Shown: positions 44,680-61,253, counted from the first letter of the stretch. The stretch is DNA of 64,000 bases from Eutreptiella sp. 'Long Island Sound 2002' (GCA_964036045.1 OZ038378.1:20460001-20524000), one strand, 5' to 3'. Made by a program: numbers and translations. Notes: generated from the sequence alone by a model not told the origin.

Positions 44680-46440
44680 AAAGTCGAGGTCATACAGAAG
44701 GTCTTGTACGTGGATGGGGCAACGTACTTTGTGCGAGGCGTGAACTACAACCCGATCCCCAAGGACGAGGACGGCACCGCGGAGCCGTACGGGGACTACT
44801 TTTGGATGCCATATGTGTCGTCCGGCTGGGGGCCCAAGTCCATCTCGTACCTGTACACAGCATCTGGGAGCATCTGGGAGGGGATCAAGAACAAGGTCTC
44901 AGGGTATAGCAGCTGGCACAAGGTTCACCTGGAGGAGATTGCCAAGACGTTCAACACCATCCGGATCTACAGTTGGCAACTCGGCAATGAGCACACGGAC
45001 TTCCTGGACATGTGCCACTCCTTGGGCCTGAAGGTCATTGTCACTTTTCAGGTGTAGTTTCCGCAAGAGCCTACTGGTGCCTGCGGGGGGGGGGGGGAGA
45101 AAGGGACAACGGGTCACGGAAGGGAGCCCAGACCTCCTCAACCGAGAGGTTGATGGTCACAGACAAGCATGTGACATACCGGGGGCCCATTGTAGACCTG
45201 GTCTTCCTCCTCGATGGAGGGGAGTAAGGTCGGGGCGTGGTGGGCCAACACGAGGCAGTGGCCTCATTGCCGGTGTCACCGGAGGGGTGGGGGTTGGCAC
45301 GAGGCCATAGTAGTAGTCTGCTTTCCTTTGGCGGCGCCTACTGGCCTCTCGCCACTGAACAGTCCGACCCTCTGTGGGTTCGAACTTGGTCTGGTTGTGT
45401 CAACAGAGCCCCTGGATGATTTGTCCTGTGTGACTACCCTGGGGTCGGCTATCCCAGAGATGGGCCGTTGCCCGTGCCATTGACCAGGTGCATCCAGATG
45501 CACACTCCGAGTCCATGCTGAGCCTGCCGACTCAGGTATGGACCTGTGCGCACCGGTGTGTGCGCGCCGGTGTGTGCACCCGCTGACAGGGGCTTGTAAC
45601 ACCCACAATGATTCGTCCCCTGGTTGTTTGTTCCCCTTCTGTTGTGCTCTGCACCGTTTTCGGCGAGTGCGGTCTGGCCTGCCCTTTTTCATCTGGTGCT
45701 CCCCTTTCCCCTGGTTCTTCTGGGTCCTCCCTGTTGTCCCCGACCGGGGGTATGCTGTAGGGTGGGGGGGGCGTGTGTTGCGCCGTGGGGTGGGTGGGGG
45801 AGGGTGGTCCATGGCAGGGGGGGGGCGTGTGTCGCGCCGGGGGCTGGGTGTGGGAGGGTGGTGGTGGGGGGGTTATATCCATTCGTCATGTGCAGATGGA
45901 CACCGCATTGTACAAGGACCTGTCCGACGAGGACACCATCGCCGAGGCCTTGAAGAACTTCCGGCACATGGTCCGCACGTACAAAGGCTCCCCAGCCATT
46001 CTGATGTGGGCCATCTCCAATGAGCCCAATTCGCAGAGCAACGGGACTCGTACGCCGTCGCCTCGGCGTTGGGGCGGTTCTTCTACTTCCTGGAGGCGAT
46101 TGCGGAGGTGCGGGACGACGAGGAGAGCTTCGGACCGTACTTCCCACACCCGCTGCTGGTGCCCATGGCTGACGAAAACAGTTGGGCAACGGAGGTTGCG
46201 ACGTATGACCATGCGAGGCACGAGGTATGGGGCGTTCAGGCGTACCGGGGCTCCAGTTTCGGGGATCTCTTTTCCAGTTACAGCAGCGACAAGCCACTAC
46301 TGGTTTCCGAGTACGGGATGGACGCATACCTGGACACCACCTCCGGCAGGAGCATTGAAATCCATGACACAAACGCGGAGCTGGGGGTCGACTACCAGAC
46401 CGAAGTCGTTCCCGCGCTCGCGAAGGAGATCGAGGCGGCG
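44680..46440 (+). other. Clan GH-A (GH2/GH72/GH158-like) TIM barrel, N-terminal part
   Basis: YFVRGVNYNP, FNTIRIYSW, LGLKVIVTF, MWAISNEPN (acid/base Glu) and LLVSEYG (nucleophile Glu). Confidence 0.8.
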
Positions 46441-47069
46441 GACTCGCGCCGCAACACCACGTGGTTCACGGCCACGACTCTGCTGCGGGGGGACTCCCCG
46501 GACAGCGGCGGGGGGTACGCCGTGATCGAGTACAACGACTACTCCCGATACCTGAGGTACACGATCTACCACCGAACCTTCACGGACGGCTCCATCAGCT
46601 ACAGCATGCCCGGGGGGCTGTTCAACACCAGCTCCAGTTCTCAGTGGTCGTCCGACACCGTGGTCCTTGATGGCATGTCGGAGGAGGAGGTTAACACCAC
46701 CTCCGACGATGCAGAGTACCAGGTCGCCTCTGGGCTGTCGCTGTGCTCCGCGTGGAACGGCGAGTCCATCGGCACCTGCTACAACATCTCCGATATCGAC
46801 GGCGTTGCGCAGGAGCTGGTCGACGCGTTCGGGGGCGGGGATTGTGCCGTGGATTGGGCCTGCGCGGCGATCGCCACGTGCTACTTCAGCGCCAATGAGC
46901 GCCACTGGTGTGCCTGGACCAACAAGTCCGTCTGTGAGGACGCGTTCAACGGCTGTGACGTCACGCACGCCCCGTCCCCGGACTATCCCACGTCCTGGGC
47001 GGACACCGTGGAAACCCCGGAGACGCTGAGCAGCTGGTTCGACGGTGACACGGCCTCAGATGCGCTGAC

Positions 47070-48280
47070 GAAGACGGTGAACGGCGAGACGCTAACGCTG
47101 GTGTTCAGTGACGAGTTCAATGAGGAGGGCCGTGACCTGGGCCCCGGCAAAGACGCCAAGTGGGAGGCCGTGGACCTGCACTACTCAGCGACCGGTGACG
47201 ACGAGATATATAAACCGAGCGGCGTGACGGTCAGCGGCGGCTATGCGTCCATCAAGTTCGAGACCAACACGACGTATGACCTCGATAACACCGAGAAGGA
47301 GTTCAAAACTGCTATGCTGCAGGGCTGGAACAAGTTCTGCTTCACTGGGGCCTACCTGGAGGGGAGTATGAACCAGCCAGGGAAGTCAACCACGAGCGGT
47401 GTCTGGTCGGCATTCTGGACCCTGGCCAACCTGGGCCAGGCCGGATACCTGGACAGCACCGCCGGGATGTGGCCCTTCACCTACGACCACTGCGACACGG
47501 TGGCGAGTGAGGGGCAGGCGTCCTGGGAGAACACGAACCTGGATGCCCAGAACTTCAGCGCGTGCGGGGATTTCAATGCGGAGTACGGCTTCCAGTCGCA
47601 CGTGGGCCGTGGGGTGGCCGATGTGGATGTGTTCGAGCTGGTGGTGCCTCCGAGCTGGTACAATGCCGAGCGCGGGGCTCACCTCTCAACGTCGCTGCAG
47701 CTCGGCCCGAACATCCCCCAGAACACGACCCACGGTGCTGGCCTCACGGGCAACTGCGCCAACATTTCGGACACGTGCACCGGGATATACTTCTACCAGC
47801 ATAACGGTCACGACACCGGGATGAACACGTGGTGCATGCAGCCCGGGTACCCCAGTTCGGAAACCGTCGATATCCTGGGCAACGAGCTGCAGGATTGCAT
47901 CTCAGCGGAGAGCGACGTCTACGACGAGCACTTTGAAGAGCAGCACACGTATGGCCTATGGATCGAGCCTGGGGAGTGGGCCGCATGGTACCTGGATGAC
48001 GTACTCCTGTTCAATGTCACCAAAGACGCGCTCACCAATAAGACCAACCCGAACAACTCCAGCGAAGCGGTTGGCAGTCGGCAGGTGCCTTACGAGCCCA
48101 TGTACATCATCCTGAACATCGCGAGCTCCAACAGCAACTTCCTTCCTCGTGACCCCAGTCTAGAGCTCCCGGTCTACATGCATGTGGATTGGGTGCGGCT
48201 CTACCAGAACACGGACCGGCACAGCGTGGGCTGCGACCCCACAGATTTCCCGACAGAGTCGTACATCAATGCCAACCTGG
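47070..48280 (+). other. GH16 KRE6/SKN1-like beta-glucan synthesis-associated domain
   Basis: LVFSDEFN, WEAVDLHY, MLQGWNKFCFTGAYLE, WSAFWTLANLG, GRGVADVDVFE, PYEPMYIILN and MHVDWVRLYQ. Confidence 0.88.
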
Positions 48281-48399
48281 ACAAGTTCAAGACCAGTCGG
48301 TGTGGCAACGGCCAATGCGAATCCGGGGAGTGCGAGCAATGCCCGCGTGACTGTCAGTACCAAGCGGCCTGCCGGCAGGATTGCCTGGTGCCGCGATGT

Positions 48400-48860
48400 C
48401 AGATGCTTGACGGCAATTTGACAACTCCGGCCGCGTACTGGCTGTTCCAGCTCAACACCGACAACAGCCCCACTACACCCGTGGCGGACGTGGACTGGCA
48501 GCCTGGCACCGATTCAATGCTCATCAACATCACCGAAAGCGGGTCCTCCGCGTACCTTATCGCCGTATCGCAGAGCCGGCAGCTTCTGTGTCAGAACTTC
48601 CGGTACCGCGTCAACGTCACGGCGCGCTCACTGAATGGCACCGGCGGCTTCACTGTCGTGGTCAATGGGGGCTCTGCCAATTCCTACGCAGACCTTCTCC
48701 CGGACGCGTTGAACGCGACGTTCACGTCGACGGACTCTGTGACCGTCTCTGAGGACTTCGAAGTGAGCTCGCGGTGGGAGAGTGGGCAGGTGGCGATCCA
48801 ATTCGGGGCGCAGGGCAACGACAACACCGTCATTGAGCTCCAGCAGGTGTCGCTGTGCCC
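48400..48860 (+). other. CBM4/9-like carbohydrate-binding module
   Basis: AVSQ...YRVNVTARS...FTVVV...F...VAIQFG...VIELQQVSL follows the CBM_4_9 beta-sandwich pattern. Confidence 0.6.
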
Positions 48861-49809
48861 GATCCCATCGCGAGCGCAGATGTGCGGGCTCGCCCCACAT
48901 CAGGCGGCCTCCACGGCGGACGCCGCCTTGACCAAGGGGGACAGCCGGGTGACAGCCGGGTGACAGCCGAGGATACCACGACTGGGATGCGGGCGTTTGG
49001 AGTGCTGGAGGTGGTCCATGACTCGGCTCCAACGCACAGCGCGTATCTGGCCTCCGATACCGCTCGCAGCCAGAGTTCGGCCGACGCGGGCGTGAACGGT
49101 CGGGCCTATTTCTGGGTGTGTTCGACCACCAGCACCGCCACTACCACCACGTCCAGCCGCCGGAATTTGATCCAACGCCGGGCCAGCGCTCAGTGGCAGA
49201 CGGTAGGCACCGGGACGGGGAAGGGTCGGCGGGCCCATGCGAACAGGCGGGTCTCTGGCCCAGGGGCACCGCACGCGGGCGAAGCCACACAGGGACACAA
49301 CAGCGCGCCTGCCTCGCAGGCTGGCACTCGAAGCACCTCTGTGAGGGACACCACCACCACCACCACCACCGAGTACTACTCTGTGGACTTTCTGGTGGTC
49401 CACGCCGCGCCATGGTTCGAGAGCGGCGCCATGGTGCAGGCCATCGCGCTGCATCGCACGGACAGCGGGTCCGACGCGCTCCAACCTCGTCGCCCCATTG
49501 TATTGCAATGCAGATTCCTCCAGCACCACCAGCGACGGAGACGCGATGGTGCTGAACTGCAGCGAGTGGACCACGGCCGACCTGCCCCTTGATGGCAGTC
49601 CCACGACCCTCGACAACTTCACGTCCACGCTGACCGTGACGTCCACGAGCGTGGCATACCAGGCCATTAACCCTCTGAGGGGGACCATCCTGCTGACCAC
49701 GGAGGAGTACGAAGAACTGGACGGCGAAGAGCTCTACGCCATCATGTACATGGAGGACGATGCTACCGCGTACGGCCGCGCGCGCGGGGTCGTCAGGTCG
49801 CATGCGCAG

Positions 49810-50070: not shown

Positions 50071-51078
50071 ATCACGAGCGCCGGCACGGCAACGGCCTCG
50101 CGCCGGGCCTTTCTGCAGACGACCGACGACATCTTCGCCGCTGTATTCCCCAACTCCGTTTGGGATCTGCTTTCCGACGCAGAGGGGCTGGTCCTGCTCG
50201 GCATCCTGACTTTCCTCATTGTCCTGGGCACTACGCTGCCGCTCCTCTGGTCCATGTTGCAATCTCCCAAGCCCGAGAGGGTGGGCCCTCAACCGATCAC
50301 TTTGACGTACCGCCTCAGCGACGGGGACATGCGGCGAAGCAGAAGTGCCATCCTGGACAACAAAGGGGAGGTGCCGGAACACGAGGTCCCCACCGTGAGC
50401 ATGACCATCACGCATCGCAACCTGCACGGCCTGGGCCCTGTCGAGCTGCTGCGGTCGGACGCGGACAGTGACGTCGCATCGACAGTGACTTCGCGTTACG
50501 TGGAGCTCCGGCAGTAGGTCCGCTCGCTGGCAGGGGTGTTCTGGAGGTGCCTGTCCACAGACACGGAGCGGGACTTTCTCATACGCGATGTGGTGCTGCC
50601 GGAGATCCAACGGCTCGGAGAGGGCAAAGCGATCGCGCGGCTGGACGCGCTTTCCGATGCACTGCAGTGGCCCGACCGATACGAGCCATGGCACGGGCAG
50701 CTGTTGCTGCTGCTGGCGGACTACCCACAGGCAGTGGAGGTGGACGTGGAGCTGACGCGCGTCCGCATTAAGGACGCCGCCGCAGAGACCCCAGAGGAGT
50801 GGATCGAGGTGGAGGGGAGCATGTTCATTGTGCGGGCCTACATGCGCCACGTGCGACAGCAGCTGAGCCGCACCGCACGCCACGAGGACCAGATCTTGGA
50901 CTGGGCGGCGGAGGCGGACTTCGAGAGTGCCTTCAACACCTTCGATGCCGAGGCCCTGGACCGGGCCTGTGAGCGGCTGTTCCGCCTTGTCTGCCCCACT
51001 GAGGTGGCCCTTGCGGACTGGGCCCCCCCAGACTTCCACACGGGAGACGCCCCCAAGTGCTACGACTACGCGGCCCTG

Positions 51079-51092
51079 ACGGTGCTCTTCCT
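51079..51092 (+). repeat. 14-bp target-site duplication ACGGTGCTCTTCCT (partner at 58987-59000)
   Basis: Exact direct repeat flanking the LINE. Confidence 0.97.
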
Positions 51093-51481
51093 TTTTTGCA
51101 CTGAACGGCGCCTTTTGTGGCTGGCCAGGCCGGGGAGAAAGGCTCTTGCGCGCCAAGCTTTTTTGGGGAGGGGCGGGAGCCCGAAATCAAGTTCAATCGC
51201 GGGCTGAGTACCGCTGCACGTTGCTGTCCTCGTCTGCTTCATCTCAAAGAGACTTGGCAGCCCCGTTATAGACAACCGCAGGCCGGGGTCTCCGCTTGAT
51301 ACCCGAAGGCGGTGTGGTTGCGGATTGGGGGTTAGAGCATGACGGCTTGAGCACGGGGGGTGGCTTGGGGGAGGGATTCATTTGCAGAAGTGACTGGTGA
51401 GTGCCAGTGTGGTAGTACTGATTGATCGCGCCGCTAGGGCTGTCGAGGGTCGGCGTGAGAAAATGTGTAAGTGTGGCTTTT

Positions 51482-54400
51482 TCAAAGAGATGACACGTTG
51501 GACGAGTGTGAGGACGATTGTGAGTTTGTACTCGCGGGGGAGGGGGGGGCTGGTGCGAAGTACCTTGTTATGCGAGGAGAAGGGGCGGAAATGGGGGCGG
51601 AGGCGGCGAGGGGGGGTGCTGGTCTAGGGGGGGGGGGGAGGTTGAACATGTCCCTGATTGTGAGCGGCCGTTTGGGGGGCGGAGGCTCTGGCTGGGGTTG
51701 ACTTGCGGTACCGCGTTTCAGTGATAGAGGCCGGACGGGCCTTGGGGGCTGGCGGCCGTGTTTTCGAGTTTTGGTGTGTGCCGCAGGAGATGGGGGGCGG
51801 GGGCGTTTTGGGGGCTTGTGTGCAACTTTGTCCGGGAGGGGGGGGGGAGGGTGGTAGGCGGGGGGGGGGCGTTGTTGGGCGGTGTGCGACGTGCTGTAGG
51901 GCGACCAGGGGCGTCCCCATGAGTTGGGGCCCGTAGGGGGGGTGAGCGGGGCTGGGGGGGGGTGGTCTTTTAGCCATTCCAGCGTGCGGTATAGGGCGCT
52001 GAGGAGCAGGGGAACACGATCCTTCAGGGCGAGTTTTAAGTCGTGACAGTGTGCTGGTTTTCTTCGGCCGGAGGGGGGGGTTGTGAGTTTGGTGTACAGC
52101 GTCATGGGAACAAGCCCCCGGACGAAATTGCGTCTCTCCCCCACGTGTGTGGTCGCGGACCACCATTGGGACACCACCGTGGTGAAGGGGGGGCGCCAGC
52201 ATTGAATGTAGGATTGGACCAGGTGTTCGCACGTTGGGCAGTGTGAGACGAAAGAGATAACATCCATCGGGTGCGGGTCGGGGCAAGCGTGGCAATGGCG
52301 AGGGCGCAAGTCGTCGTGGAATGCAAATGGCGCCATGTTGAAATTTCCGGAGGACCATTTGAAAGGGAGGCCTTTGAACCACGTAGTGTGATTGTAAAAG
52401 TGGAAGCTGGACGGTGCGTGGATGTTTTCGTGTTTGTGGCGAGGGAGGAGATGCTTGATTGAGGTTGTAGTCAATTTGTGTATGACTGGGAGGGGGCCCC
52501 TGGATATGCACCCTATCGGGGGGGGGGGAAGGAGGGAGGGGTCCCAGACCATCACGTGGGCGGCCCACTTTGAGTAAGCATCTGAGATTTCATTCCCCAC
52601 GAACCCGGCGTGCCCCTTGATCCACCCCCAACCCTGGATCATCCCTGGGCGTAGGGAGGCCTGAATGGACTGGAGAGAGGATTCCCACGTGCCGGCTGGC
52701 GAGCGTGATGGGAGGCCTGGGGGGGTGTTCGGAGAGAGAACAGTGATAACGTGGAGGTTGTCCCCTAGCACGGCGAAGGTGAGGTGCGGGTGAGATGCAA
52801 GGGCCCACCGTAGGAACATAATAGCGGCCCAGAACTCCGATCCCTCTGATGACTGGTACGGGGACGTTTGGCACAGTACCCATCTGGAGCCATTTGGAAA
52901 AAACAGGGTGGCCGCCGATCCGTAGCCCAAGGCGCCCGCTGAGCCATCCAAGTACACCCATGTCGTGCCGGGGGACGATGCGAGGAGGAGGGCAAGGGCT
53001 GCTTCACAACCCCATTCTTCGAGGTCGTCGGGGTCAAGGGAGTGAGGTTCATCTGGGAGCCGGTACAGCTCGCCATGCAGTGACGAGTCGAGTAGGACCC
53101 CGCCGTATGGCCCGGGGGGGGGGTTGAGGATGTATTCTTGAGGGTGAAGAAGGGGGGGGGTGAGCAGTTCGTGGCGCCCCGCCAGTTGAGGGAGGACAGA
53201 AATGGCTGGGTTTTGAAAGGTGTATTCTTTCTCGTTGCGGCGGAGACCGGGGTTTTTGATGGTGTGGGTGGTGTCGTCCGAAAACTGGAGTGTGGCCGAT
53301 TCTGAGTGCACTTCCGTGACTGTACCTAGGTGGAACCCCAGGTCCTGGGGCGTCCGTTTTAATCTGTTGCCGAACTTGCTGTATTGTGGTGCCGGCTTGG
53401 TGGCTAGGAACCGGACCTGGACTTTTTCTTTTGGGAGGAAAAGGGAGGGGGGGCAGGAGGCCCAGAGGCCGGTGCTGTGGTATCGGAAGCCTATGGCGTG
53501 GCATGCGTCCATGATGGTGTCTTGGATTGGGTTGCGTGTGGTGGAGAGCATTGCTTCGGAAAAAGATTCGTTTGTCGAGGCCGGGCCGTCTCCGTTGAGG
53601 TACCTTATTGCGGTGTTTACCAGGGCCATGCAAATTGAAAAAGTGAAGTGGCGGAGTCCTAAGCCTCCCTGGTGGCGAGGGGTGTAGCGGGCCTTAGGGG
53701 AGACGAGGCGGGAGATCCTGTTGGCTCTGTCCGGGGAGGGGTCATGCGCAACATTTTGCCAGATCATGGCCTGAAGGGCCCCCAACTCGTTCAGGGCCAG
53801 GGGGTGTGCCATGAGGCGGTAGGAAAGAATAGGGATGAGTTGGACGTTCACCAAGAGAATGTATTCCGAAAGGGTGAGCTGGAGGGGTTGGAGGGTTGTG
53901 AAAAATGAGCGTATTTCCGACTTGGCCAATGCCAGTGTTTGTGCCTCATGGTTGGCGGTGAAGATGTATACCCCTAGGTATTTGTAGCAATTGTGTGGTT
54001 GCCCCGTCTTTCGGTTTGTTGTCGACAGGGGGGTGCCCGAGGGGGAGGTGAAGGTTCTGGGGGGAGCTGTTCCCATAGCGTGGATCTCGGTTTTGCTGAG
54101 GTTAAGGTCTAGACCCCACTCCCTGGCGACCGTGTCGAAGAAGTTTAAAACTTGCTGTATGCGGTCCCCATTCTCTGATCGATAGAGGAGGTCGTCAACA
54201 AAGGCGTGGCCCGATTCGTGTGGGGAGGGGGGTGCAAGGGGCGTAGGAAAGTTCAGGCGGGATAGAACTGTGAAGAGGGTGGTGTGGGGGACGGAGTTAA
54301 AAGCCTTATTGAAATCAATGTAGAGGCTGTAGCTACCGACCGATTCCCGAAACGTGGATAAGAGGTTGAAAATGTGGTCCTGGCATCTGCGGTTCGGAAG

Positions 54401-56221
54401 CCCGCCGAACTGGGTGGGGTGTATGATGGAATGTTCAATGGCCGCTGCCAGTAGCTCTCGGTTGGCGTGTGTTGCAATTATTTTGTAAACGCTGTTCAGC
54501 AAGGCTATAGGCCTGTAATTTACCGGGTTCATCACGTCCCCTTTCTTAAAAAGCAAGATAATGTTGGCTTCGAGCCATTTCTCGGGCAACGGCCGGTGGA
54601 GGTAGTAGTTGCATACCTTCCAAATGAATTGTTGGATAGGGGGGGGGGAGACGTGCAAAGTGTAGTTGTTTGTGAAGTCCCGCCCCCCCGCCTTGTTGGG
54701 CTTGGACCTCTTAAGCGTGTTGCGTAACGATTCCTAGGTAATGTCAGGGAGGAGGCCGTGTTTTGTGGGTTCGGGGCAGGCGGGGGAGTGTGCGAGTAGG
54801 CGATCCACTAGAGTGTTCGGCGGTGCGTATTCGAGGCTGCCCCCCAGGGTGAGGAGTGTAGAAGAGAAAATAGAGCCCACTTCCTTGGGGGTGGAGACGA
54901 GCTGTGTGGTGCCCGGGCGCTTCAGCGTTATTTCACCTCGTTCCACGGGGTTGAGCGCCTCGTTGATGGTGCGTTTGATCCTAGTTTTCCTCACTAGGCA
55001 CCGATGGATTTTGGTGGTTGCGGCCTTGTTCACTTTGGTTTCCCACTCCTTGACGAGTTTGTTGAGCGTGTCCATGGAAGCGGGGTAGTTGGGATGGCTG
55101 GGGGGGGGCAGGGTTTGCAGGGACTCTTTGATTTTCTTTACCAGAGCCGAGGAGGTAGGGCGTGACGGCGTGGTGATACTGTGGTAGCTGGTCGCCACTT
55201 CCTCCAGCACGACGTCTGTGAAAAGCTCGATGTCCGCCGAGGACAAGGACTCAAAGCGGGGGAGGGTAGACTCGCACCACCGCGCCAGGGGGGCAAGGGA
55301 GTCGTGGTGCTTGGAGCGTTCCCGCTCCGTCAGTTTTCGGAAAACTTTCCTCTTAGTTGTGGGAGCTTCGGTAAAAGGGTGAGGGGGGACTTGAGAGGTG
55401 TACGTGACTGGGTGGTGGTCTGACGTTTTGTCGTCGGTTTGGATGGTTGCAGAGGTGGGGGCAAAAAATTCCGAGGCCGCCGGGGAGAGCAAAATATGGT
55501 CAAGGCGGCTACTGCTTGCCCTGTACGGGGTGGGGTATCGGGAGAAGGACCGCTCGGTCGGGTGAAAGTGCCGAAAGGTATCGATGAGGCGCGGCGGGTC
55601 GCTCGTGATCTGTCTGCGAAGCCACGGCCATTCGTTGTCCGTTTGGAGGTTCGATCCGTCTAGTTCAGGGCACATTATGCAATTGGTGTCCCCACCGAGG
55701 ACGTGGTTAGGATACTGATGCATGAGTGGCCGTAGGATGTTTTCAATTTTTGAGCGGTGGACGTCCGTGCTTGGGGCGTATACCGAGACCAGCAAGGTGG
55801 GCGGGGCCCCCGGGAGAGTGAGAACGGCTGCCGCCAGCATCCCTTCTGTATCTAGTCGGGGAAGGGGGGTAACGAAGCGGGAGAGCCGGGGGGAACAGAC
55901 CAAGACGGAACCATGCTCGCCTCTGGAGTGTTTGTCTTGGCTGATATTCGAAACGATGGTGGCTTTAGTGCCCGAACCGTAGGCGTATACGTGGGGGAGG
56001 ATGGGGGCGTGATTGATTTCTTGGAGGAAGAGGATGTCGAAGTCGTTCTTGAGGTGTCGGAGAATTTGGCTGCTCACTATGGGTTTCTTCTGCAAGTTGT
56101 GGGATAGAAAACGCAGTTCTGAAGGGAGGGGTATGGGGGGGCGGTGAGGCCGTTGGTAACCCTTCCGTAGGCGCGTTTTGGATCTCGGGGGGGGCGGGAT
56201 AGGGGGGGGCTGGGGGGGCAC
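51482..56221 (-). pseudogene. LINE ORF2: APE endonuclease, RT, RNase H, C-terminal Cys/His knuckle; one in-frame TAG (54736-54734) and an in-frame deletion in RT
   Basis: APE: FLSHN, FLQE, GGDTN, SRLDHIL, SDHHPV. RT: NYRPIALL, DFNKAFNSV, AFVDD, YKYLGV. RNase H: YLDGS, SEFWA, GDNL, WIKGHAGFVGNEISD. The QGCPLSP motif is absent. Confidence 0.92.
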
Positions 56222-56438
56222 TGGGGAGCCGGGCTGGCTGGGCTGGCTAAGGCAAAGAAAGTGCTGAATTTGGTCGGCCGGTATCCCGGCCGAGGTGAGC
56301 TCGTCGTCTAGCCCCTTGCCTGTGATGGTGGAAGCCGTGACTGGGCCGGTGGTTCACTGAATCTTGGCCCTTTTGTGTTCAGGTAGAGGGGGCTGGACAG
56401 TGCAGGGGGCGGGTACCCGGCCCTCTGGCTTTCGTGGG

Positions 56439-58763
56439 TTAGCTTGCCTGTGGTATGTGTCGGAGGATTAGAGCGAGGCGAGGGACGGTACGAGGGACGG
56501 TTAGCCCAAACACTTCGTCTTCTCTCCGTCGAGGTATACCGTGGTGCCACTCATGGCGTGCGGCCCCCGTGAGGACCAGGAGAGAGCGGGCAAACAGGCG
56601 GATGCGAAAGGAGTCCCCGTTGGAGGGGTTCTTAAAGAACATTGTGGTGTCCGATTGGGAACCAAAAATGGACACTGGGTCGCCTAGCAAGGGGTCGTCC
56701 CCGTGGTAGCCGATGCCCTCTCCCGGGAGATACATTGTGCCCGTGATTTGGTTGGGAGGAGGGTGTGAGAGGCCTAGCCGCTCCAGCGCGGCATTGTAGG
56801 TTTGGAGGATGGAGGAAAACTCTTCCGGGATGGGGGACGTGGCGGCGACTTTGCTCGGGCCGAGGTATGCGTGGCCGAAGTGTTGGACTGAGCGCCCGTG
56901 GTACTTCTCCCACGTGTTGTCGTGGAGAATCTTTTTTACCGTTTCCTCTTGGCTTTCGGAGAATACGTCGCGGACGTAATAAAAACCAGCGGGGAGGCGG
57001 GGGTCGATTTGAATATCCGAGGCGGGGGTGGGGGCACCGTGGTCGGGGGGTAGGAGGGTGGTCGCCTCGCCTCCTAGTGGAGCAAGCAGCGGGACGCTGG
57101 TCTCGGACATCTCTTCGATGCGGCTTGGTCCCGGCGTTGGCGTAGCGGCGCCGGCGTCCTCCGGTGCCGCGTTCCACTCGCTGATGCGCTCAGTCAGCCC
57201 CGTAGCGGGCCTTTCTCGAAGGGCGGTGACAAGTTGGGACACGAAGGCCGTGGACCCCAAGGCGGCTCCCGCTTGGAGGCGCTGCACTATGGGTTGCTCG
57301 TGCTCGGCCACATCCGGGTCTTGAGCGGGGAGGATCTTCTCGAGGGCGATGAGGTTGCGGTGTAGTGGGGCAAAGGCAGCGTCTCCATATTTGAAGTCAT
57401 GCGCTAGCAGCGCGGATTCCCCCTTTTCGTAGACCACGAGGTAGGCTTGTTGGTGTTCGTAGGGAGGCCGCGTGGGCTCGAACGACACGTACGGGCCAAG
57501 AAACCCCGCTTGGACGCGCAAGTCGAGAGCGTGCGCCGATCTTGGGGCCACTAGGAGCACGGCGGTCTTCGGGGCCTTAGATGAGTCGTATGAGGGCGGG
57601 GCCGGCGTCGCGTGGGCTCGCTCGGGGGCGCCCGAAGGCGCGGACCTCGCGTTGCCGTCGGATCGTGACGAGAACCGCACTAATTGCCCATCTATGCCAT
57701 GAAAGAGGACAATGCCGCATGAGTGGAAGAAGCGGATAGCTAACGTTTGGACACCGGTCTTCATGACGTCGCACGGCGCGTGAGTGGTGTCAATCGCCAC
57801 GACCAAGGAATCTTTAGACCGGAACATCGCTCCTAGGGGCGGTGAGGCGCCCCGTCCACCGGGCAGGTTGGCGATCATCATGGCGAGCATTTCCGGAGCT
57901 TGTAGGTCTTTGTTTCTTTCCTTTCGGTCCCTAGCGATCACGGCTCGATACACTTCGGTAGTCGGCAAAGCGTGCATGTCCATTGCAAGGAGTTCTCCGG
58001 TGAGGAATTGGGCGCACTCTCGGACCTTAAACATGAGCTCGTCGGCAAAGCGAGATGGGAGTTCCCAATCAAACCGGTAGTAGGCCCAATGCGGGCTCTC
58101 GGAAGGGACTATGTGGCCAAACGGGTAGTAGGCATTTTTGGTGTTCACCGATACGTGTGCTAGCGCGGGGACAAACATTTCGTTCATTAACTTCATGAAA
58201 GCACGGGCGTCTCCAATTTTGCGTTGCCTTGGTTTAGTTTTATCTCTCTCTTCCGGCGGCGAAGGCTCAATGTGATCAAGGAATTCTATGCTCACCTCAA
58301 AACGTAGTCCCGTGTTAGCCCACGGGGTGGCGGTGGGTGGAGACTCCTTGGCTTCGGCTTGGGAATAGTCCAACTCATACGGCTTTAGGTAGAAACGCTT
58401 GTGCTTGAACAAAAGCTTTTCGAGCTCGTTGTAGTTATTGTGCGCAACGGAAGAGACCCTACCTCGATCTAGAATTTCCGTGGAGTTGCTCCCAACGAAG
58501 GCGGATTGAATATCGGTGCCTTCCACATCCAGGTAAAACTCGGAGTAGTCTTGTAGTCGGCGGTAGACTTCGGGAACGAAAATGCGTTGGCGTGTGTCAA
58601 ATATTTTGCCTTCAATGGCTTCAAGTTGGCGTGACGGAAAGCGTGTTTGCAACGGCGAATTTGAGGCTTGGTGTTTTTGAAAGAGGTGTGACGGAGAATA
58701 ATTGAATAGCGTTGAAAGGCCATCATCGGCGGCTTTGGAGCTTCCAAATAGGGTGAAATTCAT
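56439..58763 (-). CDS. LINE ORF1, 774 aa from the first in-element ATG: RRM-like segment and C-terminal AlkB-family 2OG-Fe(II) dioxygenase domain
   Basis: GFYYVRDVFSESQEE...RSVQHFG...PNQITGTMYLPGEGIGYHGD...RSLLVLTGAARHEWHHGI...RLALILR shows HxD, distal His and RxxxxxR intact. Confidence 0.88.
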   Translation of the reverse strand: MNFTLFGSSKAADDGLSTLFNYSPSHLFQKHQASNSPLQTRFPSRQLEAIEGKIFDTRQRIFVPEVYRRLQDYSEFYLDVEGTDIQSAFVGSNSTEILDRGRVSSVAHNNYNELEKLLFKHKRFYLKPYELDYSQAEAKESPPTATPWANTGLRFEVSIEFLDHIEPSPPEERDKTKPRQRKIGDARAFMKLMNEMFVPALAHVSVNTKNAYYPFGHIVPSESPHWAYYRFDWELPSRFADELMFKVRECAQFLTGELLAMDMHALPTTEVYRAVIARDRKERNKDLQAPEMLAMMIANLPGGRGASPPLGAMFRSKDSLVVAIDTTHAPCDVMKTGVQTLAIRFFHSCGIVLFHGIDGQLVRFSSRSDGNARSAPSGAPERAHATPAPPSYDSSKAPKTAVLLVAPRSAHALDLRVQAGFLGPYVSFEPTRPPYEHQQAYLVVYEKGESALLAHDFKYGDAAFAPLHRNLIALEKILPAQDPDVAEHEQPIVQRLQAGAALGSTAFVSQLVTALRERPATGLTERISEWNAAPEDAGAATPTPGPSRIEEMSETSVPLLAPLGGEATTLLPPDHGAPTPASDIQIDPRLPAGFYYVRDVFSESQEETVKKILHDNTWEKYHGRSVQHFGHAYLGPSKVAATSPIPEEFSSILQTYNAALERLGLSHPPPNQITGTMYLPGEGIGYHGDDPLLGDPVSIFGSQSDTTMFFKNPSNGDSFRIRLFARSLLVLTGAARHEWHHGIPRRREDEVFGLTVPRTVPRLALILRHIPQAS

Positions 58764-58958
58764 GGTGTTTTCGGGATGAACGAAAAGGTGGCTTGGCGTC
58801 AATTGAAAGATTGCGAGCGTGGATTTGAACTCGGGAATTGAGATGATGATTTGAAAACTGCGGGAAAGGCTCCAGAACTTGAACAGCCCAGGATTTTCTC
58901 CAATCACCGAATAGCCTGGACTACTGGTGGATCCATCAACAAAATGCTGAGGGTCAAT

Positions 58959-58984
58959 CGAAAAAAAATAGACACTCAGAAAGT
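58959..58984 (-). other. Euglenid spliced-leader exon ACTTTCTGAGTGTCTATTTTTTTTCG, retroposed at the LINE 5' end
   Basis: The reverse complement of cgaaaaaaaatagacactcagaaagt is a 26/26 match to the Euglena SL as I recall it. It is followed by ATTGAC rather than a GT donor, so it is not an SL RNA gene. Confidence 0.93.
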
Positions 58985-61253
58985 GAACGGTGCTCTTCCT
59001 CGCAGTGCAACAGTTCTGTGAGAACCTGCGCCAGTCCGGCATCTTCAAGAAGCGGACATGGCAGTACCTCGCTGCGGCCCTGCCTACGGTTGATCCAAAC
59101 GCCCTGGACGGCAGCAAAGCGCCGTGGGTCGGCTTCCGGCGGCGCTGCGTTGGCGTGCGGAAGCTCCTGCGGCTCCTGCTGACAATGGTCGACAAGGACG
59201 TGATCAACTTCGCTGACGTGGACGACATCTTCAGCCGCACCACCGTGGACGGCCCCACGCAGGAGGACGGGCACAAGATCCCGATGTATGTGGAGCCGGA
59301 GCCCCAGGGTTTTCAGTGGTGTATACCGAGGCGCCGCCTCCCGCCAGTCCGCAACTACGACGAGCTCGTCCCGGGGCAGGCCGTGGGCCATCCCGCAGCC
59401 TTGGCTGAGACCTTCCGCAAGACGTACTGCGAGGCTGTCAGCAATGGTACGCTGCTGCGGCTGTTCTTCTTCGTGTTCCACGCGCACGCGCTGCTCTTCC
59501 TCGTGTGCCTAATGCTCGACACCCGCAATGTCCGCTGGGAAGTCGCGTTGTGGGTACTCAGCGTCTTCGAGGCCGGTGCCACAACACCGCCCGCGGGTGC
59601 GCCATCATCGATTCGGACTGGATGTGCTACCCGGGGGTCATCGTATTCTACTTCGTGATCTTCCTGTCGCAAATGATGGTGACAACCATCCTCTGGGTGC
59701 TGATCTCCATGCTCTGGGGCCTGTTCCAGGGGGTGAAGAAGTCCGTGGGGGCCATCGGCAGCTGGAAGAACGTGCAGCCCTCGATGGACGTCCACCACCA
59801 GCAGATGATTCTTTACACCCCCTTCAGCAATACGGCCCGCTGTTCGCCAACATGCGGCTCCTGGCCCTGCAGCACTGGGTCCACCTGTGGCACTGGGACT
59901 TGATCGGAAAGGACGCCCTCCGGGAGGCCTGCAACTGGCGGTTCCTGAACCCAACCTCCGAAGAGGGCCGGGTGCTGACGCTGGGACACCTCAACGGCCA
60001 CATGGGCCTGTTCTCCTTCGTCTACGGCAGCCAGCACACGGGGGCCGAGCGCAAGCGCATCTCCCACGCCGTGCAGTGCATCTTCAGCATGCGGGCCATT
60101 ACGTATATGGTCCCCGTGTACAACGAGACGGTGTGATACACTTGTGGCGTCCTCAAAAAGGACTGCACCCTCGAGCACCTGATCACGCTCTACCCGGAGG
60201 AGTGGGAGAACTTCTGCGAGCGCACGTTCTACGGCGTGCACCCTGACGAAGTCAGCAAGGCCTTCTTCGCCAAGGGGCAGGCACTCGCGAAGCTGTTCAT
60301 CGACGCGCGGGCCCCGCACATCGCCGCCGTGTGGCAGCGGCTGCGCTCGTGGCCTCCGACCGGGAAAGGCACCCTGTGGACCTCGAAGCTGACGGACTAC
60401 CCCGTGAACATTCGGGACGTGCTACTTTCCGCACGATCCCCCCCCCAGTATCCCGCCGGAGTATGCGACGACGTCTGCCCCCCCCAAGCAGCAGGCAGAG
60501 CTGCTGCACCAGGTCGAGTTCTGGGCACAGCAGCAGGTGCGGTGGTGGGCCACCATGCGGGGCCAGACTCTGGGGCGGACCCTCCTCGGGCTGATGGAGA
60601 TGCGCGAGGCGCTGGTGGACGTGGCGTACCTGGAGCTGAAGACGGTGCACAGCAAAGGCTTCCTCGACGTCGACTACCACAACCCGTCCTCGCGGTGCCG
60701 CTACGACGACGTTCTTGCATGGCTCCAGCGGAACCGCTACCACCTCTTCAATCGGCGGGCCAACGTGGCGAATGCCATATTCTTCGACCCGGAGGACATG
60801 ACGTTGCTGTGTCCCGAGCGGGCTCTGCACAAGGGCCTGTCCCACAGCTCCGCGCTGGCCGTGGTGGTGTGCGCGGAGCTCGCGTGCGCGTGCTTCCTGG
60901 AGCAGTACGCGCTCCAGACTGCGTTCGGGGGCCGCGGGTCGGCCTATGAAGTGCTGATGGCGAAGGACAAGACCGGGGAGTTCGTGCTGCCGTACCTCGT
61001 GTCCCCGAAGATGAACCCGCACCCGGACACGCCCGAGGAGTTGCTGGGCCCCGACGCAGAGCCGCAGCTGCGGCAGGCCCTGGGGCGGTTCAGTGAGGCA
61101 CTGCATGAACTGGAGGAGGCCAATCGGTTGCGCACCAAAGCGGAGCAAGTCGTGGCCGACAAGTTCCAGGTTCTGGTGGGGGCCCAGGTCTACGAGGAGC
61201 AGAAGGCCACGTACACAGAGATCAATGAGTGCCTCGCGCTGTGGAAGCTGCGT

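What the first reader, a model, noticed from the sequence alone, without database searches (positions are those of the whole stretch)
51093..58986. A LINE whose genomic copy begins with the host spliced leader
Between a perfect 14-bp TSD, the element reads SL(26 nt)-5'UTR-ORF1-ORF2-3'UTR-A5. This is direct sequence evidence that the LINE RNA was SL trans-spliced, capped like a host mRNA, and then fully reverse-transcribed. Trans-splicing discards everything upstream of the acceptor, including any internal promoter, so the life cycle must differ from standard LINEs. It differs from trypanosomatid SLACS/CRE elements, which insert into SL genes, and parallels relic SLs on retroposed dinoflagellate genes.
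Basis: partly seen in the sequence, partly recalled or inferred. Interest (0 to 1): 0.9.

Follow-up and report, generated by a model that had tools for sequence, protein, structure and literature searches.

The report
Jumping gene headed by spliced leader
This stretch is one (broken) copy of a very young, abundant Euglena jumping gene (a LINE) whose full-length copies all begin with the cell's own spliced leader, the tag normally added only to finished messenger RNAs; so a leader-tagged RNA is what gets copied back into DNA, and how such copies are switched on again is an open question.

Summary
Observation confirmed. On the minus strand, 58986-51093 is a LINE flanked by a perfect 14-bp target-site duplication. 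It reads tc + the published 26-nt Euglena gracilis spliced leader (SL), 5'UTR, ORF1 (AlkB-like C-terminus), ORF2 (APE endonuclease, RT, RNase H), 3'UTR and A5.

This copy is defective: a 387-bp ORF1 deletion, a premature ORF2 stop and a 58-aa RT deletion.

The family is young (copies differ at 0-4 of 1,480 positions) and abundant (315 exact 5' heads, 1,387 3' ends). Every head examined is SL-derived with unrelated flanks, and no copy with upstream "outron" sequence was found. Nine of nine full-length copies have 14-19-bp TSDs. At least three more distant LINE families are SL-headed too.

Trans-splicing of LINE RNA is supported by five copies joined to the SL at an internal AG and by one SL + relic-SL head. 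Genome-wide there are about 3,200 SL-tagged retrocopies and at least 100 relic-SL tandems, as in dinoflagellates.

Still unresolved: whether the SL is renewed at every cycle or is now inherited as DNA with transcription starting at the head. No RNA data were available.

The scan met this family before on other DNA of this genome (s1-206431, s1-202939, s1-222727). I found no paper describing it.

The parts
58987..59000 (-). 5' target-site duplication (aggaagagcaccgt on the minus strand)
   Evidence: D18: 100% identical 14-mer, spacing 7,908.
58985..58986 (-). Two non-target bases (tc) ahead of the 26-mer, at the position of the AC that starts the 28-nt SL
   Evidence: Not part of the TSD. The SL primer in PMC5654406 begins with AC. 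All 8 SL-RNA genes examined have AC here. LINE heads have C at -1 in 35/36 and A25/T10/G1 at -2.
58959..58984 (-). Host spliced leader, 26 nt, ACTTTCTGAGTGTCTATTTTTTTTCG
   Evidence: Identical to the published E. gracilis SL and to the exon of the SL-RNA genes L001-L008.
58764..58958 (-). 5'UTR (195 nt), starting ATTGACCCTCAG. The first ~100 nt are conserved in the sister subfamily
   Evidence: No Rfam ribozyme match and fold z-score -0.55.
56439..58763 (-). ORF1, 774 aa here (903 aa in intact copies). Private in-frame 387-bp deletion at about 58315
   Evidence: Contigs from other copies diverge at 58315 (table 7).
56517..56840 (-). AlkB-like 2OG-Fe(II) dioxygenase domain at the ORF1 C-terminus
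   Evidence: Pfam PF13532, E 4.3e-07 here, and 34.8 bits (above the 31.2 cut-off) in intact copy L070. Closest solved relatives are an S. pombe protein (P8A3.02c), ALKBH8 and ALKBH6. HxD, second His and RxxxxxR motifs are readable in the translation.
51482..56221 (-). ORF2, one frame of 1,579 codons. Private stop at 54736-54734 and private 58-aa RT deletion at about 54238
   Evidence: At 54735 all public contigs differ from the window (table 3). The intact form is P0001, 1,589 aa, in a cluster of 372 sequences.
55415..56104 (-). APE-type endonuclease domain
   Evidence: Pfam PF03372, E 2.6e-09. EN+RT align to human L1 ORF2p, E 1.5e-19.
54040..54544 (-). Reverse transcriptase domain (truncated in this copy)
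   Evidence: Pfam PF00078 in 2 stretches. Complete in P0001, E 7.4e-32. Alignment.
52565..52963 (-). RNase H domain
   Evidence: Pfam PF00075, E 6.1e-05, just below the cut-off.
51098..51481 (-). 3'UTR (384 nt)
   Evidence: The same 3' end occurs in 1,387 places.
51093..51097 (-). Short A-tail (A5, or A6 counting the ambiguous first TSD base)
   Evidence: A4-A8 in the other full-length copies.
51079..51092 (-). 3' target-site duplication

Best explanation
This is a dead copy of a recently active APE-type LINE family of Euglena gracilis (full length about 8.45 kb). ORF1 has an AlkB-like domain; ORF2 encodes endonuclease, RT and RNase H.

The family's retrotransposition template is an mRNA that carries the host spliced leader at its 5' end.

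Shown:
- The SL (28 nt counting the leading dinucleotide) is the first sequence of every full-length copy.
- Insertion left 14-19-bp TSDs and a short A-tail, as in target-primed reverse transcription.
- cDNA synthesis reached the very end of the SL.
- LINE RNA of this family has been trans-spliced, because alternative SL junctions lie exactly after AG dinucleotides.

Inferred:
- The SL is put on by the host's SL trans-splicing machinery and is renewed recurrently, rather than being a one-off fossil. This gives the LINE RNA the cap and leader of a host mRNA.
- New copies therefore arrive without upstream transcription signals.
- Most copies are probably silent. Expression then depends either on rare source copies that have a 3' splice site at the SL/5'UTR boundary, or on initiation at the head (see rival 1).

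The same machinery has written about 3,200 SL-tagged RNAs back into this genome.
For: - SL identity. SL-RNA genes with a GT donor and intron; the two loci scanned against Rfam have adjacent 5S genes.
- Heads: 30/30 further copies have the SL abutting the 5'UTR with unrelated flanks. Among copies with an exact 5'UTR start, all 46 non-canonical upstream contexts are still SL-derived. That screen covers about 94% of possible non-SL contexts.
- TSDs of 14-19 bp and A4-A8 tails in 9/9 full-length copies.
- Trans-splicing of LINE RNA: five dispersed copies read SL|CATTTTG, joined exactly after the 5'UTR's first AG. One copy reads SL + relic TGTCTAT7CG + 5'UTR. The sister subfamily has SL + relic + AAATTTATTGATG twice.
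- SL renewal: the SL is 26/26 in the young family and in diverged LINE families whose 5'UTRs and ORFs are far apart, with ORF2 identity of 45% and 33%. By my own estimate, DNA inheritance without selection would give P of about 0.003 or less for the nearest sister.
- The delta-A SL isoform occurs on this LINE, on three other LINE lineages, on unrelated retrocopies and on SL+intron copies.
- Within one old sub-lineage, a copy with an A-containing SL nests with two delta-A copies: 17 + 7 shared sites, bootstrap 100/99 and 95/94.
- Literature: Euglena outrons use AG acceptors and more than 70% of mRNAs are trans-spliced.
Against: - No RNA evidence. No RNA run was on record and only contigs could be laid.
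- No copy in the assembly has an outron or an AG acceptor at the SL/5'UTR boundary. The one CAG-bearing copy (L061) is old and 9% diverged. So the precursor needed for renewal at the canonical junction has not been found.
- If SL-headed copies were re-expressed by read-through, SL+relic or SL|CATTTTG heads should accumulate. They are only about 1-2% of heads.
- The first head nucleotide (A/T) shows some lineage association: T in 6/11 copies of three sub-lineages against 1/21 elsewhere, and sister pairs tc/tc and ac/ac. This hints at DNA templating of the head.
- All 8 delta-A copies fetched belong to the old subfamily and none of the 31 young copies examined has it. That pattern is also compatible with inheritance or with a recurrent RT slip.
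Confidence: 0.55

Rival explanations
1. Fossil SL plus internal promoter. An ancestor's RNA was trans-spliced once. Since then the SL has been part of the element's DNA. Transcription of SL-headed copies starts at or next to the first head nucleotide, driven by signals inside the SL and the conserved first ~100 nt of the 5'UTR. This would resemble Pr77 of trypanosomatid L1Tc/ingi or the Inr/DPE promoters of insect LINEs. Occasional trans-splicing of these RNAs gives the rare variant heads.
For: - Every potential source already has the SL in DNA and none has an acceptor.
- Variant heads are rare.
- The first ~100 nt of the 5'UTR are conserved between subfamilies whose downstream sequence is unalignable.
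- The first head nucleotide is partly lineage-associated.
- Delta-A heads are confined to the old subfamily.
- Precedent: L1Tc transcripts start at +1 from an internal promoter (PMC1874656), and Pr77 binds TBP and SNAP50 (PMC8190864 title). That SNAP50 also serves SL-RNA genes is my own knowledge.
Against: - It requires near-perfect purifying selection on all 26 SL positions in several anciently diverged LINE families.
- An A-containing SL is nested among delta-A copies.
- The first head nucleotide switches too often within sub-lineages for simple inheritance.
- A DNA-encoded SL would not receive the TMG cap that the authentic SL carries (PMC3388326).
- No promoter is known or testable here.
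Confidence: 0.3
2. Promoter-fusion masters (SLACS-like logic). One or a few source copies sit directly behind an SL-RNA gene promoter and exon. SL-LINE RNA is then transcribed as a unit without trans-splicing, and all dispersed copies are dead on arrival.
For: - It would explain why no acceptor is needed.
- L047, a young copy, has about 18 nt resembling the C1-type SL-gene upstream region directly before its SL. This is unique genome-wide, with about 0.002 expected by chance on my estimate.
- Three LINE heads lie inside the C4 SL-RNA gene array.
- In trypanosomes SLACS is reported to use the interrupted SL gene's start site (my own knowledge, not checked here).
Against: - No LINE head sits behind a C1-type SL-gene upstream region at up to 3 mismatches over 54 nt.
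- L047's similarity stops after about 18-27 nt, it has private substitutions that no other copy shares, and no assembled SL gene matches its extension.
- The upstream regions of the other SL-gene arrays could not be read, so the test is incomplete.
Confidence: 0.07
3. SL added during reverse transcription. LINE RNA starts at ATTGACCC, and the RT, on reaching the 5' end, jumps onto a free SL exon or another SL-bearing RNA.
For: - Non-LTR RTs are known to template-jump end to end (my own knowledge).
- Some genomic SL tandems have junctions that are not after an AG, such as SL-AC-SL and SL|AGTGTC.
Against: - The jump would have to be essentially 100% efficient, because no head lacks the SL.
- The minor junction lies exactly after an AG, as splicing predicts.
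- Thousands of ordinary SL-tagged retrocopies are explained by trans-spliced mRNAs.
Confidence: 0.03
4. Assembly or cDNA-contamination artefact: the SL-LINE junction is not genomic.
For: None found.
Against: - Perfect TSDs at 9 loci.
- Unitigs of two runs cross the junction into unique flank.
- The same loci appear in a second assembly.
- Hundreds of copies have different flanks.
Confidence: 0.01

Closest known systems
Relic spliced leaders on retroposed genes of dinoflagellates (mRNA recycling; PMC5585692, PMC6050394)
   Same: A complete SL is written into DNA at the 5' end of a retro-copy. Tandem truncated relic SLs arise from re-trans-splicing at an AG inside the SL. Here the AG is at SL positions 9-10, giving a 16-nt relic, with at least 100 cases.
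   Different: Here the tagged RNA is the LINE itself, in several families, and the SL is its regular 5' end. In the dinoflagellate papers read, the source of RT is unknown or only presumed to be LINEs. The organism is a euglenid.
L1Tc / ingi of trypanosomatids (APE-RT-RNase H LINEs with the Pr77 internal promoter; PMC1874656, PMC8190864)
   Same: Same supergroup (Euglenozoa), where most mRNAs are trans-spliced. APE + RT + RNase H architecture. The problem to solve is the same: making a full-length RNA in a trans-splicing host.
   Different: L1Tc transcripts start at +1 and are explicitly unspliced and lack the SL. The Euglena elements all begin with the SL. No sequence relationship to Pr77 was tested.
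SLACS / CZAR / CRE site-specific retrotransposons in kinetoplastid SL-RNA genes (my own knowledge)
   Same: LINEs physically associated with SL sequence.
   Different: Those elements insert INTO SL-RNA genes at a fixed site using a restriction-like endonuclease. This element is dispersed, with unrelated flanks, an APE endonuclease and a whole SL as its own 5' end. No copy sits behind a C1-type SL-gene upstream region.
Human LINE-1
   Same: Best solved structural relative of ORF2 across EN + RT. TPRT hallmarks: TSD, A-tail, and 5'-truncated copies (1,387 tails against 315 or more heads). Extra 5' nucleotides and microhomology at 5' junctions.
   Different: L1 carries its own internal promoter and a host-independent 5' end. 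It has no RNase H and no AlkB domain. The Euglena A-tail is only 4-8 nt.
R2 and L1Tc 5' HDV-like ribozymes (co-transcription plus self-cleavage; my own knowledge)
   Same: Another way in which LINEs obtain a defined 5' end from host read-through transcripts.
   Different: No ribozyme family matched and no unusual structure was found at this 5' end. Here the defined 5' end is the host SL.
Orchid Ty3/Gypsy elements with an AlkB m6A-demethylase domain (PMC9289625)
   Same: A retrotransposon that has captured an AlkB-family dioxygenase.
   Different: Those are LTR elements of plants. Here the domain is fused to LINE ORF1 and is closest to ALKBH8/ALKBH6. I found no paper on AlkB in a LINE ORF1.

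Membership tests
APE-type non-LTR retrotransposon (LINE) | Apurinic/apyrimidinic-type endonuclease N-terminal to the RT in ORF2 | tested here: met
   PF03372, E 2.6e-09. EN+RT align to L1 ORF2p, E 1.5e-19.
APE-type non-LTR retrotransposon (LINE) | Reverse transcriptase domain | tested here: met
   PF00078, E 7.4e-32 in intact copy P0001. The window copy lacks 58 aa of it.
APE-type non-LTR retrotransposon (LINE) | No LTRs; variable-length TSD; 3' A-rich tail; 5'-truncated copies | tested here: met
   TSDs of 14-19 bp and A4-A8 tails in 9/9 copies. 1,387 3' ends against 315 exact 5' heads.
SL-tagged retrocopy (dinoflagellate-type mRNA recycling) | Full host SL encoded in DNA at the 5' end of an insertion bounded by TSDs and ending in poly(A) | tested here: met
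SL-tagged retrocopy (dinoflagellate-type mRNA recycling) | Truncated relic SLs in tandem behind a fresh SL | tested here: met
   At least 100 cases genome-wide. One copy in this LINE family (C1:72395299) and two in the sister subfamily.
SL-tagged retrocopy (dinoflagellate-type mRNA recycling) | A parent locus whose pre-mRNA has an outron and an AG acceptor at the SL addition site | tested here: not met
   None among copies with an exact 5'UTR start, at about 94% sensitivity. It may be unassembled.
SLACS/CZAR/CRE (SL-gene-specific LINEs) | Insertion at a fixed site inside SL-RNA genes | tested here: not met
   Flanks are unrelated. No head sits behind a C1-type SL-gene upstream region.
SLACS/CZAR/CRE (SL-gene-specific LINEs) | Restriction-enzyme-like endonuclease C-terminal to the RT | tested here: not met
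   The endonuclease is N-terminal and APE-type.
L1Tc/ingi clade | Transcripts start at +1 from the Pr77 internal promoter and lack the SL | tested here: inconclusive
   Genomic copies begin with the SL, which is the opposite of L1Tc. Transcripts themselves could not be examined. Pr77 similarity was not tested.
L1Tc/ingi clade | APE + RT + RNase H domain order | tested here: met
   RNase H is just below the Pfam cut-off. Clade membership by RT phylogeny was not tested.
AlkB family 2OG-Fe(II) dioxygenase (ORF1 C-terminus) | Profile match above the curated threshold | tested here: met
   34.8 bits against a cut-off of 31.2 in intact copy L070; 30.8 in the window copy. PDB: ALKBH8 E 4.6e-12, S. 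pombe P8A3.02c E 3e-13.
AlkB family 2OG-Fe(II) dioxygenase (ORF1 C-terminus) | HxD...H iron ligands and the RxxxxxR 2OG-binding motif | tested here: met
   Read in the translation: YHGDD, HHGIP and RLALILR; aligned to an AlkB-like chain. Enzyme activity cannot be tested with these tools.

The most novel reading that the evidence does not exclude
A whole clade of euglenid LINEs has given up a promoter of its own. Its obligate transposition intermediate is a genuine SL-trans-spliced, trimethylguanosine-capped mRNA, renewed at each cycle. The AlkB-type dioxygenase fused to ORF1 removes base methylations on or next to the SL, or elsewhere on the RNA, so that the RT can copy the leader to its last nucleotide. 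The variable first head nucleotide (A 69%, T 28%, G 3%) would be the footprint of a modified cap-adjacent base. The same machinery drives large-scale recycling of host mRNAs in Euglena (about 3,200 SL-tagged retrocopies).
Probability: 0.25. Interest if true: 0.9.

Novelty: new variant of a known kind. Interest (0 to 1): 0.8.

Why it matters
LINEs are thought to need a way to carry their transcription start with them, such as an internal promoter, a ribozyme or a fixed target site. An abundant and apparently still active family whose DNA copies all start with a sequence that cells normally add only to RNA poses that problem in its sharpest form. It also makes the problem testable, because the SL head is a built-in tag of the RNA intermediate.

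The finding also extends SL-marked mRNA recycling, so far published for dinoflagellates (and candidates in Paulinella), to euglenids, and it names a likely engine for it. It gives a sequence-level read-out of the true 5' end of the Euglena SL. It links a LINE ORF1 to an RNA-type AlkB dioxygenase.

In practice, about 3,200 SL-tagged retrocopies and 1,400 LINE tails matter for annotating the 2.3-Gb Euglena genome. Here the element interrupts a coding exon of a beta-glucan-synthesis gene.

Tried and rejected
1. Empty target site: a 45-mer joining the two flanks has no match at up to 3 mismatches in the assembly, so there is no paralogous or allelic empty site.
2. Candidate source copy with the relic SL mutated to T8-CAG exactly at the junction (C9:25575021, L061): it is an old copy, 9% diverged, and not the source of the young burst. 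Rejected.
3. Self-cleaving ribozyme at the 5' end: no Rfam hit and fold z-score -0.55. Rejected.
4. LINE fused behind an SL-RNA gene promoter: 0 hits for the C1-type upstream region. The upstream regions of the other arrays could not be read.
5. L047's 18-nt SL-gene-like 5' extension: it is unique and statistically unusual, but three TSD guesses failed. Whether it was part of the inserted cDNA is therefore unknown, and I treat it as a lead only.
6. Delta-A SL isoform as a test of renewal against inheritance. It sits on SL+intron copies and many retrocopies, yet all 8 fetched LINE copies with it are old. The tree shows one isoform switch. A recurrent RT slip next to the T-run cannot be excluded. 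Suggestive, not decisive.
8. RNA evidence: no RNA run was on record and only Logan contigs could be laid.
9. ORF1 N-terminal ~750 aa: no Pfam family and no usable Atlas hit.
10. A first coordinate slip for ORF1 and a fuzzy-match offset were corrected.
11. The ENA assembly ERZ25074135 shares insertion loci with this genome (L081 = L059's locus, L075 = L056's locus). It corroborates structures but adds no independent insertions.

Full report
WHAT IS THERE

The element lies on the minus strand. Read 5' to 3' from 59000 it gives:
- TSD aggaagagcaccgt (59000-58987);
- tc (58986-58985);
- ACTTTCTGAGTGTCTATTTTTTTTCG (58984-58959);
- a 195-nt 5'UTR;
- ORF1 (58763-56439);
- ORF2 (56221-51482);
- a 384-nt 3'UTR;
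- A5 (51097-51093);
- the same 14-mer again (51092-51079).

The 14-mer pair is the only perfect, non-low-complexity direct repeat in the region, and it bounds the element exactly. No other part of the 64-kb window matches the element or the SL.

THE 26-MER IS THE HOST SPLICED LEADER

The 26-mer is letter for letter the SL quoted for Euglena gracilis (PMC6242988). A published SL primer is 28 nt long and begins with an extra AC (PMC5654406).

In the window's own 2.28-Gb genome the 26-mer occurs 4,728 times, against 0 for the reversed control. About 1,463 of these are followed by the SL-RNA intron (GTATATACTCGCTCC...). They sit in arrays on C1, C3, C4, C5 and C9. The eight that I read have a conserved upstream region ending ...GGTAC|ACTTT. 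The two of these that I scanned against Rfam (L002, L004) each have a 5S rRNA gene about 500 bp upstream, which fits the published tandem SL/5S arrangement (PMC3388326 citing Keller 1992). So the species' SL is this sequence, and roughly 3,200 genomic SLs are not SL-RNA genes.

ASSEMBLY SUPPORT

Unitigs from two public runs of the same organism label cover 58961-59199 and 58960-59199 with no differences. They bridge SL, tc, TSD and unique flank (table 8). Many other contigs match up to 58986 and then run into different sequences; these are other copies in other places (table 7). These runs may be the data from which the assembly was made.

WHAT KIND OF ELEMENT

ORF2 carries an APE-type endonuclease, an RT and an RNase H. 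Its best solved relative across EN + RT is human L1 ORF2p.

ORF1 is unassigned except for a C-terminal AlkB-like 2OG-Fe(II) dioxygenase. That domain scores above Pfam's cut-off in an intact copy. It is closest to an S. pombe protein (P8A3.02c), ALKBH8 and ALKBH6, and the HxD, H and RxxxxxR motifs are readable.

The window copy is broken in three places relative to intact copies:
- an in-frame 387-bp deletion in ORF1 at about 58315;
- a premature stop at 54736-54734, where every public contig has a different base;
- a 58-aa gap in the RT palm.

Full-length intact copies are about 8.45 kb.

THE FAMILY

- The first 30 nt of the 5'UTR occur 315 times exactly, and the 3' end occurs 1,387 times. Roughly a quarter to a third of copies are therefore full length.
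- Head and tail coordinates on C1 pair at about 8.43 kb; the window copy pairs at 7,866 bp.
- Young copies differ from their majority at 0-4 of 1,480 positions, and at 0.1-0.5% over the full length.
- An older subfamily is 5-9% diverged; its diagnostic 18-mer occurs 129 times.

EVERY HEAD CARRIES THE SL

In 30 of 30 further copies the SL abuts the 5'UTR and the upstream flanks are unrelated. I then searched all copies that have an exact 5'UTR start for any upstream context other than the canonical SL. This screen covers about 94% of possible non-SL contexts. All 46 hits are still SL-derived: T9 or T7 length variants, a variant lacking the A (delta-A), or decayed SLs. No copy shows an outron.

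Nine of nine copies for which I hold both ends have 14-19-bp TSDs and A4-A8 tails. The bases between the TSD and ACTTT are tc, tc, tgtc or ac where they are unambiguous. In four copies, 1-3 nt overlap the TSD, which indicates microhomology at the 5' junction.

Across 36 heads, position -1 is C in 35, and position -2 is A in 25, T in 10 and G in 1. The simplest reading is that the SL is really 28 nt long (ACACTTT...), as in the published primer and the genes, and that its first nucleotide is copied unreliably.

EVIDENCE THAT LINE RNA IS TRANS-SPLICED

- Five dispersed copies read SL|CATTTTGTTG. They lack exactly the first 12 nt of the 5'UTR (ATTGACCCTCAG), so the junction falls right after an AG that is preceded by the relic SL's own T8 tract.
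- One copy reads SL + TGTCTAT7CG + 5'UTR. This is the product expected if a read-through transcript of an SL-headed copy was spliced at the AG inside its relic SL.
- The sister subfamily shows SL + relic + AAATTTATTGATG twice.
- Genome-wide there are at least 100 SL + 16-nt relic tandems, some of them triple. This is the pattern known from dinoflagellates (PMC5585692, PMC6050394).
- Other SL-headed sequences include a C-type-lectin ORF and several other repeat families.
- At least three further LINE lineages are SL-headed: the L023/L030 subfamily, the L017/L019/L073 family (ORF2 33% identical) and L072 (ORF2 45% identical, also with AlkB). All of their 5'UTRs begin ATT...(T)CAG.

HOW IS AN SL-HEADED COPY EXPRESSED AGAIN?

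This is the open point.

For renewal of the SL at each cycle:
- The SL is perfect in active lineages of families whose neighbouring sequence is far diverged.
- The delta-A isoform occurs on SL+intron copies, on four LINE lineages and on many unrelated retrocopies.
- In one old sub-lineage an A-containing head (L061) nests with two delta-A heads.

Against renewal, or for DNA inheritance of the head with initiation at its first nucleotide:
- No acceptor-bearing source exists in the assembly. The one copy with T8-CAG at the junction is old.
- Variant heads that read-through would generate are only about 1-2% of heads.
- Delta-A heads were found only in the old subfamily.
- The first head nucleotide is partly lineage-associated: T in 6/11 copies of three sub-lineages against 1/21 elsewhere, with sister pairs concordant. 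However, it switches far too often for plain inheritance.

Other routes tested:
- A ribozyme route found no support.
- A promoter-fusion master behind a C1-type SL gene was not found.
- One young copy (L047) has about 18 nt of SL-gene-like sequence before its SL, unique in the genome. Its TSD could not be located, so it remains a lead.

My odds are: SL-bearing RNA as the template, about 0.95; SL renewed recurrently by trans-splicing, about 0.55; SL now inherited as DNA with head initiation, about 0.3; other routes, about 0.1.

SURROUNDINGS

The two flanks join into one long open frame on the plus strand (...CYDYAALTVLF|LAVQQFCENL...). This frame lies between a SKN1/KRE6 domain (46069-48960) and a glucan-synthase match (60537 onward). 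No empty site exists elsewhere in the assembly.

COMPARISON WITH WHAT IS KNOWN

- In trypanosomatids, L1Tc/ingi solve the same problem in the opposite way. An internal promoter starts transcription at +1, and the RNA is explicitly unspliced and lacks the SL (PMC1874656).
- SLACS/CRE elements insert into SL genes; this element does not.
- Dinoflagellate relic SLs mark retrogenes, with the RT source unknown.
- An AlkB domain is known in orchid Ty3/Gypsy elements (PMC9289625). I found none reported for a LINE ORF1.
- Eight full-text searches found no paper describing SL-headed LINEs or SL-tagged retrocopies in Euglena.

The scan itself had already met this family and related ones elsewhere in this genome (s1-206431, s1-202939, s1-222727). 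My results agree with those notes and add the following: the head census, the alternative junctions, the isoform and first-nucleotide analyses, the TSD series, the counts of SL genes and LINE ends, and the negative tests for masters and ribozymes.

VERDICT

The element is a defective member of a young LINE family whose regular 5' end is the host spliced leader. The trans-splicing origin of that head is well supported for the family, but whether the head is renewed at every cycle is undecided for lack of RNA data. This is a new variant of known kinds (LINE; SL-tagged retroposition) and is of high interest.

Noticed in passing
Genome-wide (G000); examples L009, L013, L014, L018, L020, L021, L027, L028: About 3,200 of the 4,728 genomic SL copies are not SL-RNA genes. 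They head unrelated sequences with unrelated flanks, often with a long ORF straight after the SL (for example a C-type lectin in L009). This suggests large-scale retroposition of trans-spliced mRNAs in a euglenid.
   Followed up: partly
Genome-wide; e.g. G000:C1:55396085, C5:86359055, C10:43091986: At least 100 tandems of SL + 16-nt relic SL (TGTCTATTTTTTTTCG), some triple. Re-trans-splicing therefore occurs at the AG at SL positions 9-10 of already retroposed copies, as in dinoflagellates.
   Followed up: partly
L010 (G000:C1:1042749-1042774 and neighbours); also C9:53599452 and C10:38877178: Some SL tandems have junctions that do not follow an AG: SL-AC-full SL, and SL|AGTGTCTA.... These could come from non-canonical acceptors or from RT template switching.
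   Followed up: no
Heads of 36 LINE copies and 15 other retrocopies; window 58985-58986: A C precedes ACTTT in nearly all retrocopies, and the base before it is A (69%), T (28%) or G (3%) in LINE heads, while all 8 SL-RNA genes examined have AC. This suggests a 28-nt SL whose cap-adjacent first nucleotide is miscopied or modified. T is enriched in some sub-lineages.
   Followed up: partly
L047 = G000:C18:34117279-34117306: A young LINE copy whose SL is preceded by about 18 nt (cacccctacagggaggac) resembling the upstream region of the C1-type SL-RNA genes. It is unique in the genome and its TSD was not found. It may be a 5'-extended SL donor transcript.
   Followed up: partly
G000:C4:178576926, C4:178855970, C4:179254585: Three LINE heads lie inside the SL-RNA gene array on C4. 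Two of them are about 4,365 nt downstream of an SL gene on the same strand, so this may be one insertion copied along with the array's higher-order repeat.
   Followed up: no
G000:C15:1478256-1774256: Seventeen copies, spaced about 15-40 kb apart, of a delta-A-SL-headed sequence (SL|ACGGCTCCTCATCAC). This looks like an SL-tagged retrocopy later amplified by segmental or tandem duplication.
   Followed up: no
window 50536-51092 and 59001-59658 (+ strand): The LINE interrupts, in antisense, one continuous reading frame of a host gene lying between a SKN1/KRE6 domain and a glucan-synthase domain. It is a recent exon disruption, and no empty copy of the site exists in the assembly.
   Followed up: partly
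window ~58315, 54734-54736, ~54238: The window copy combines two internal in-frame deletions and a stop codon with perfect ends (SL, tail, TSD). The deletions may already have been in the RNA template, meaning a defective element mobilised in trans. No other copy sharing them was seen.
   Followed up: partly
L072:4426-12701 (ENA ERZ25074135, ctg9828): A sister LINE (ORF2 45% identical, ORF1 also with an AlkB domain) is inserted inside a large polyketide-synthase-like gene. The gene caller fused its ORF1 to the PKS.
   Followed up: no
L011, L012, L025, L026: Another SL-headed repeat family (SL|GTGTCTTTTTGTCCATGC..., ORF of 486 aa or more with no Pfam match), preceded by C-rich flanks. Its nature is unknown.
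   Followed up: no
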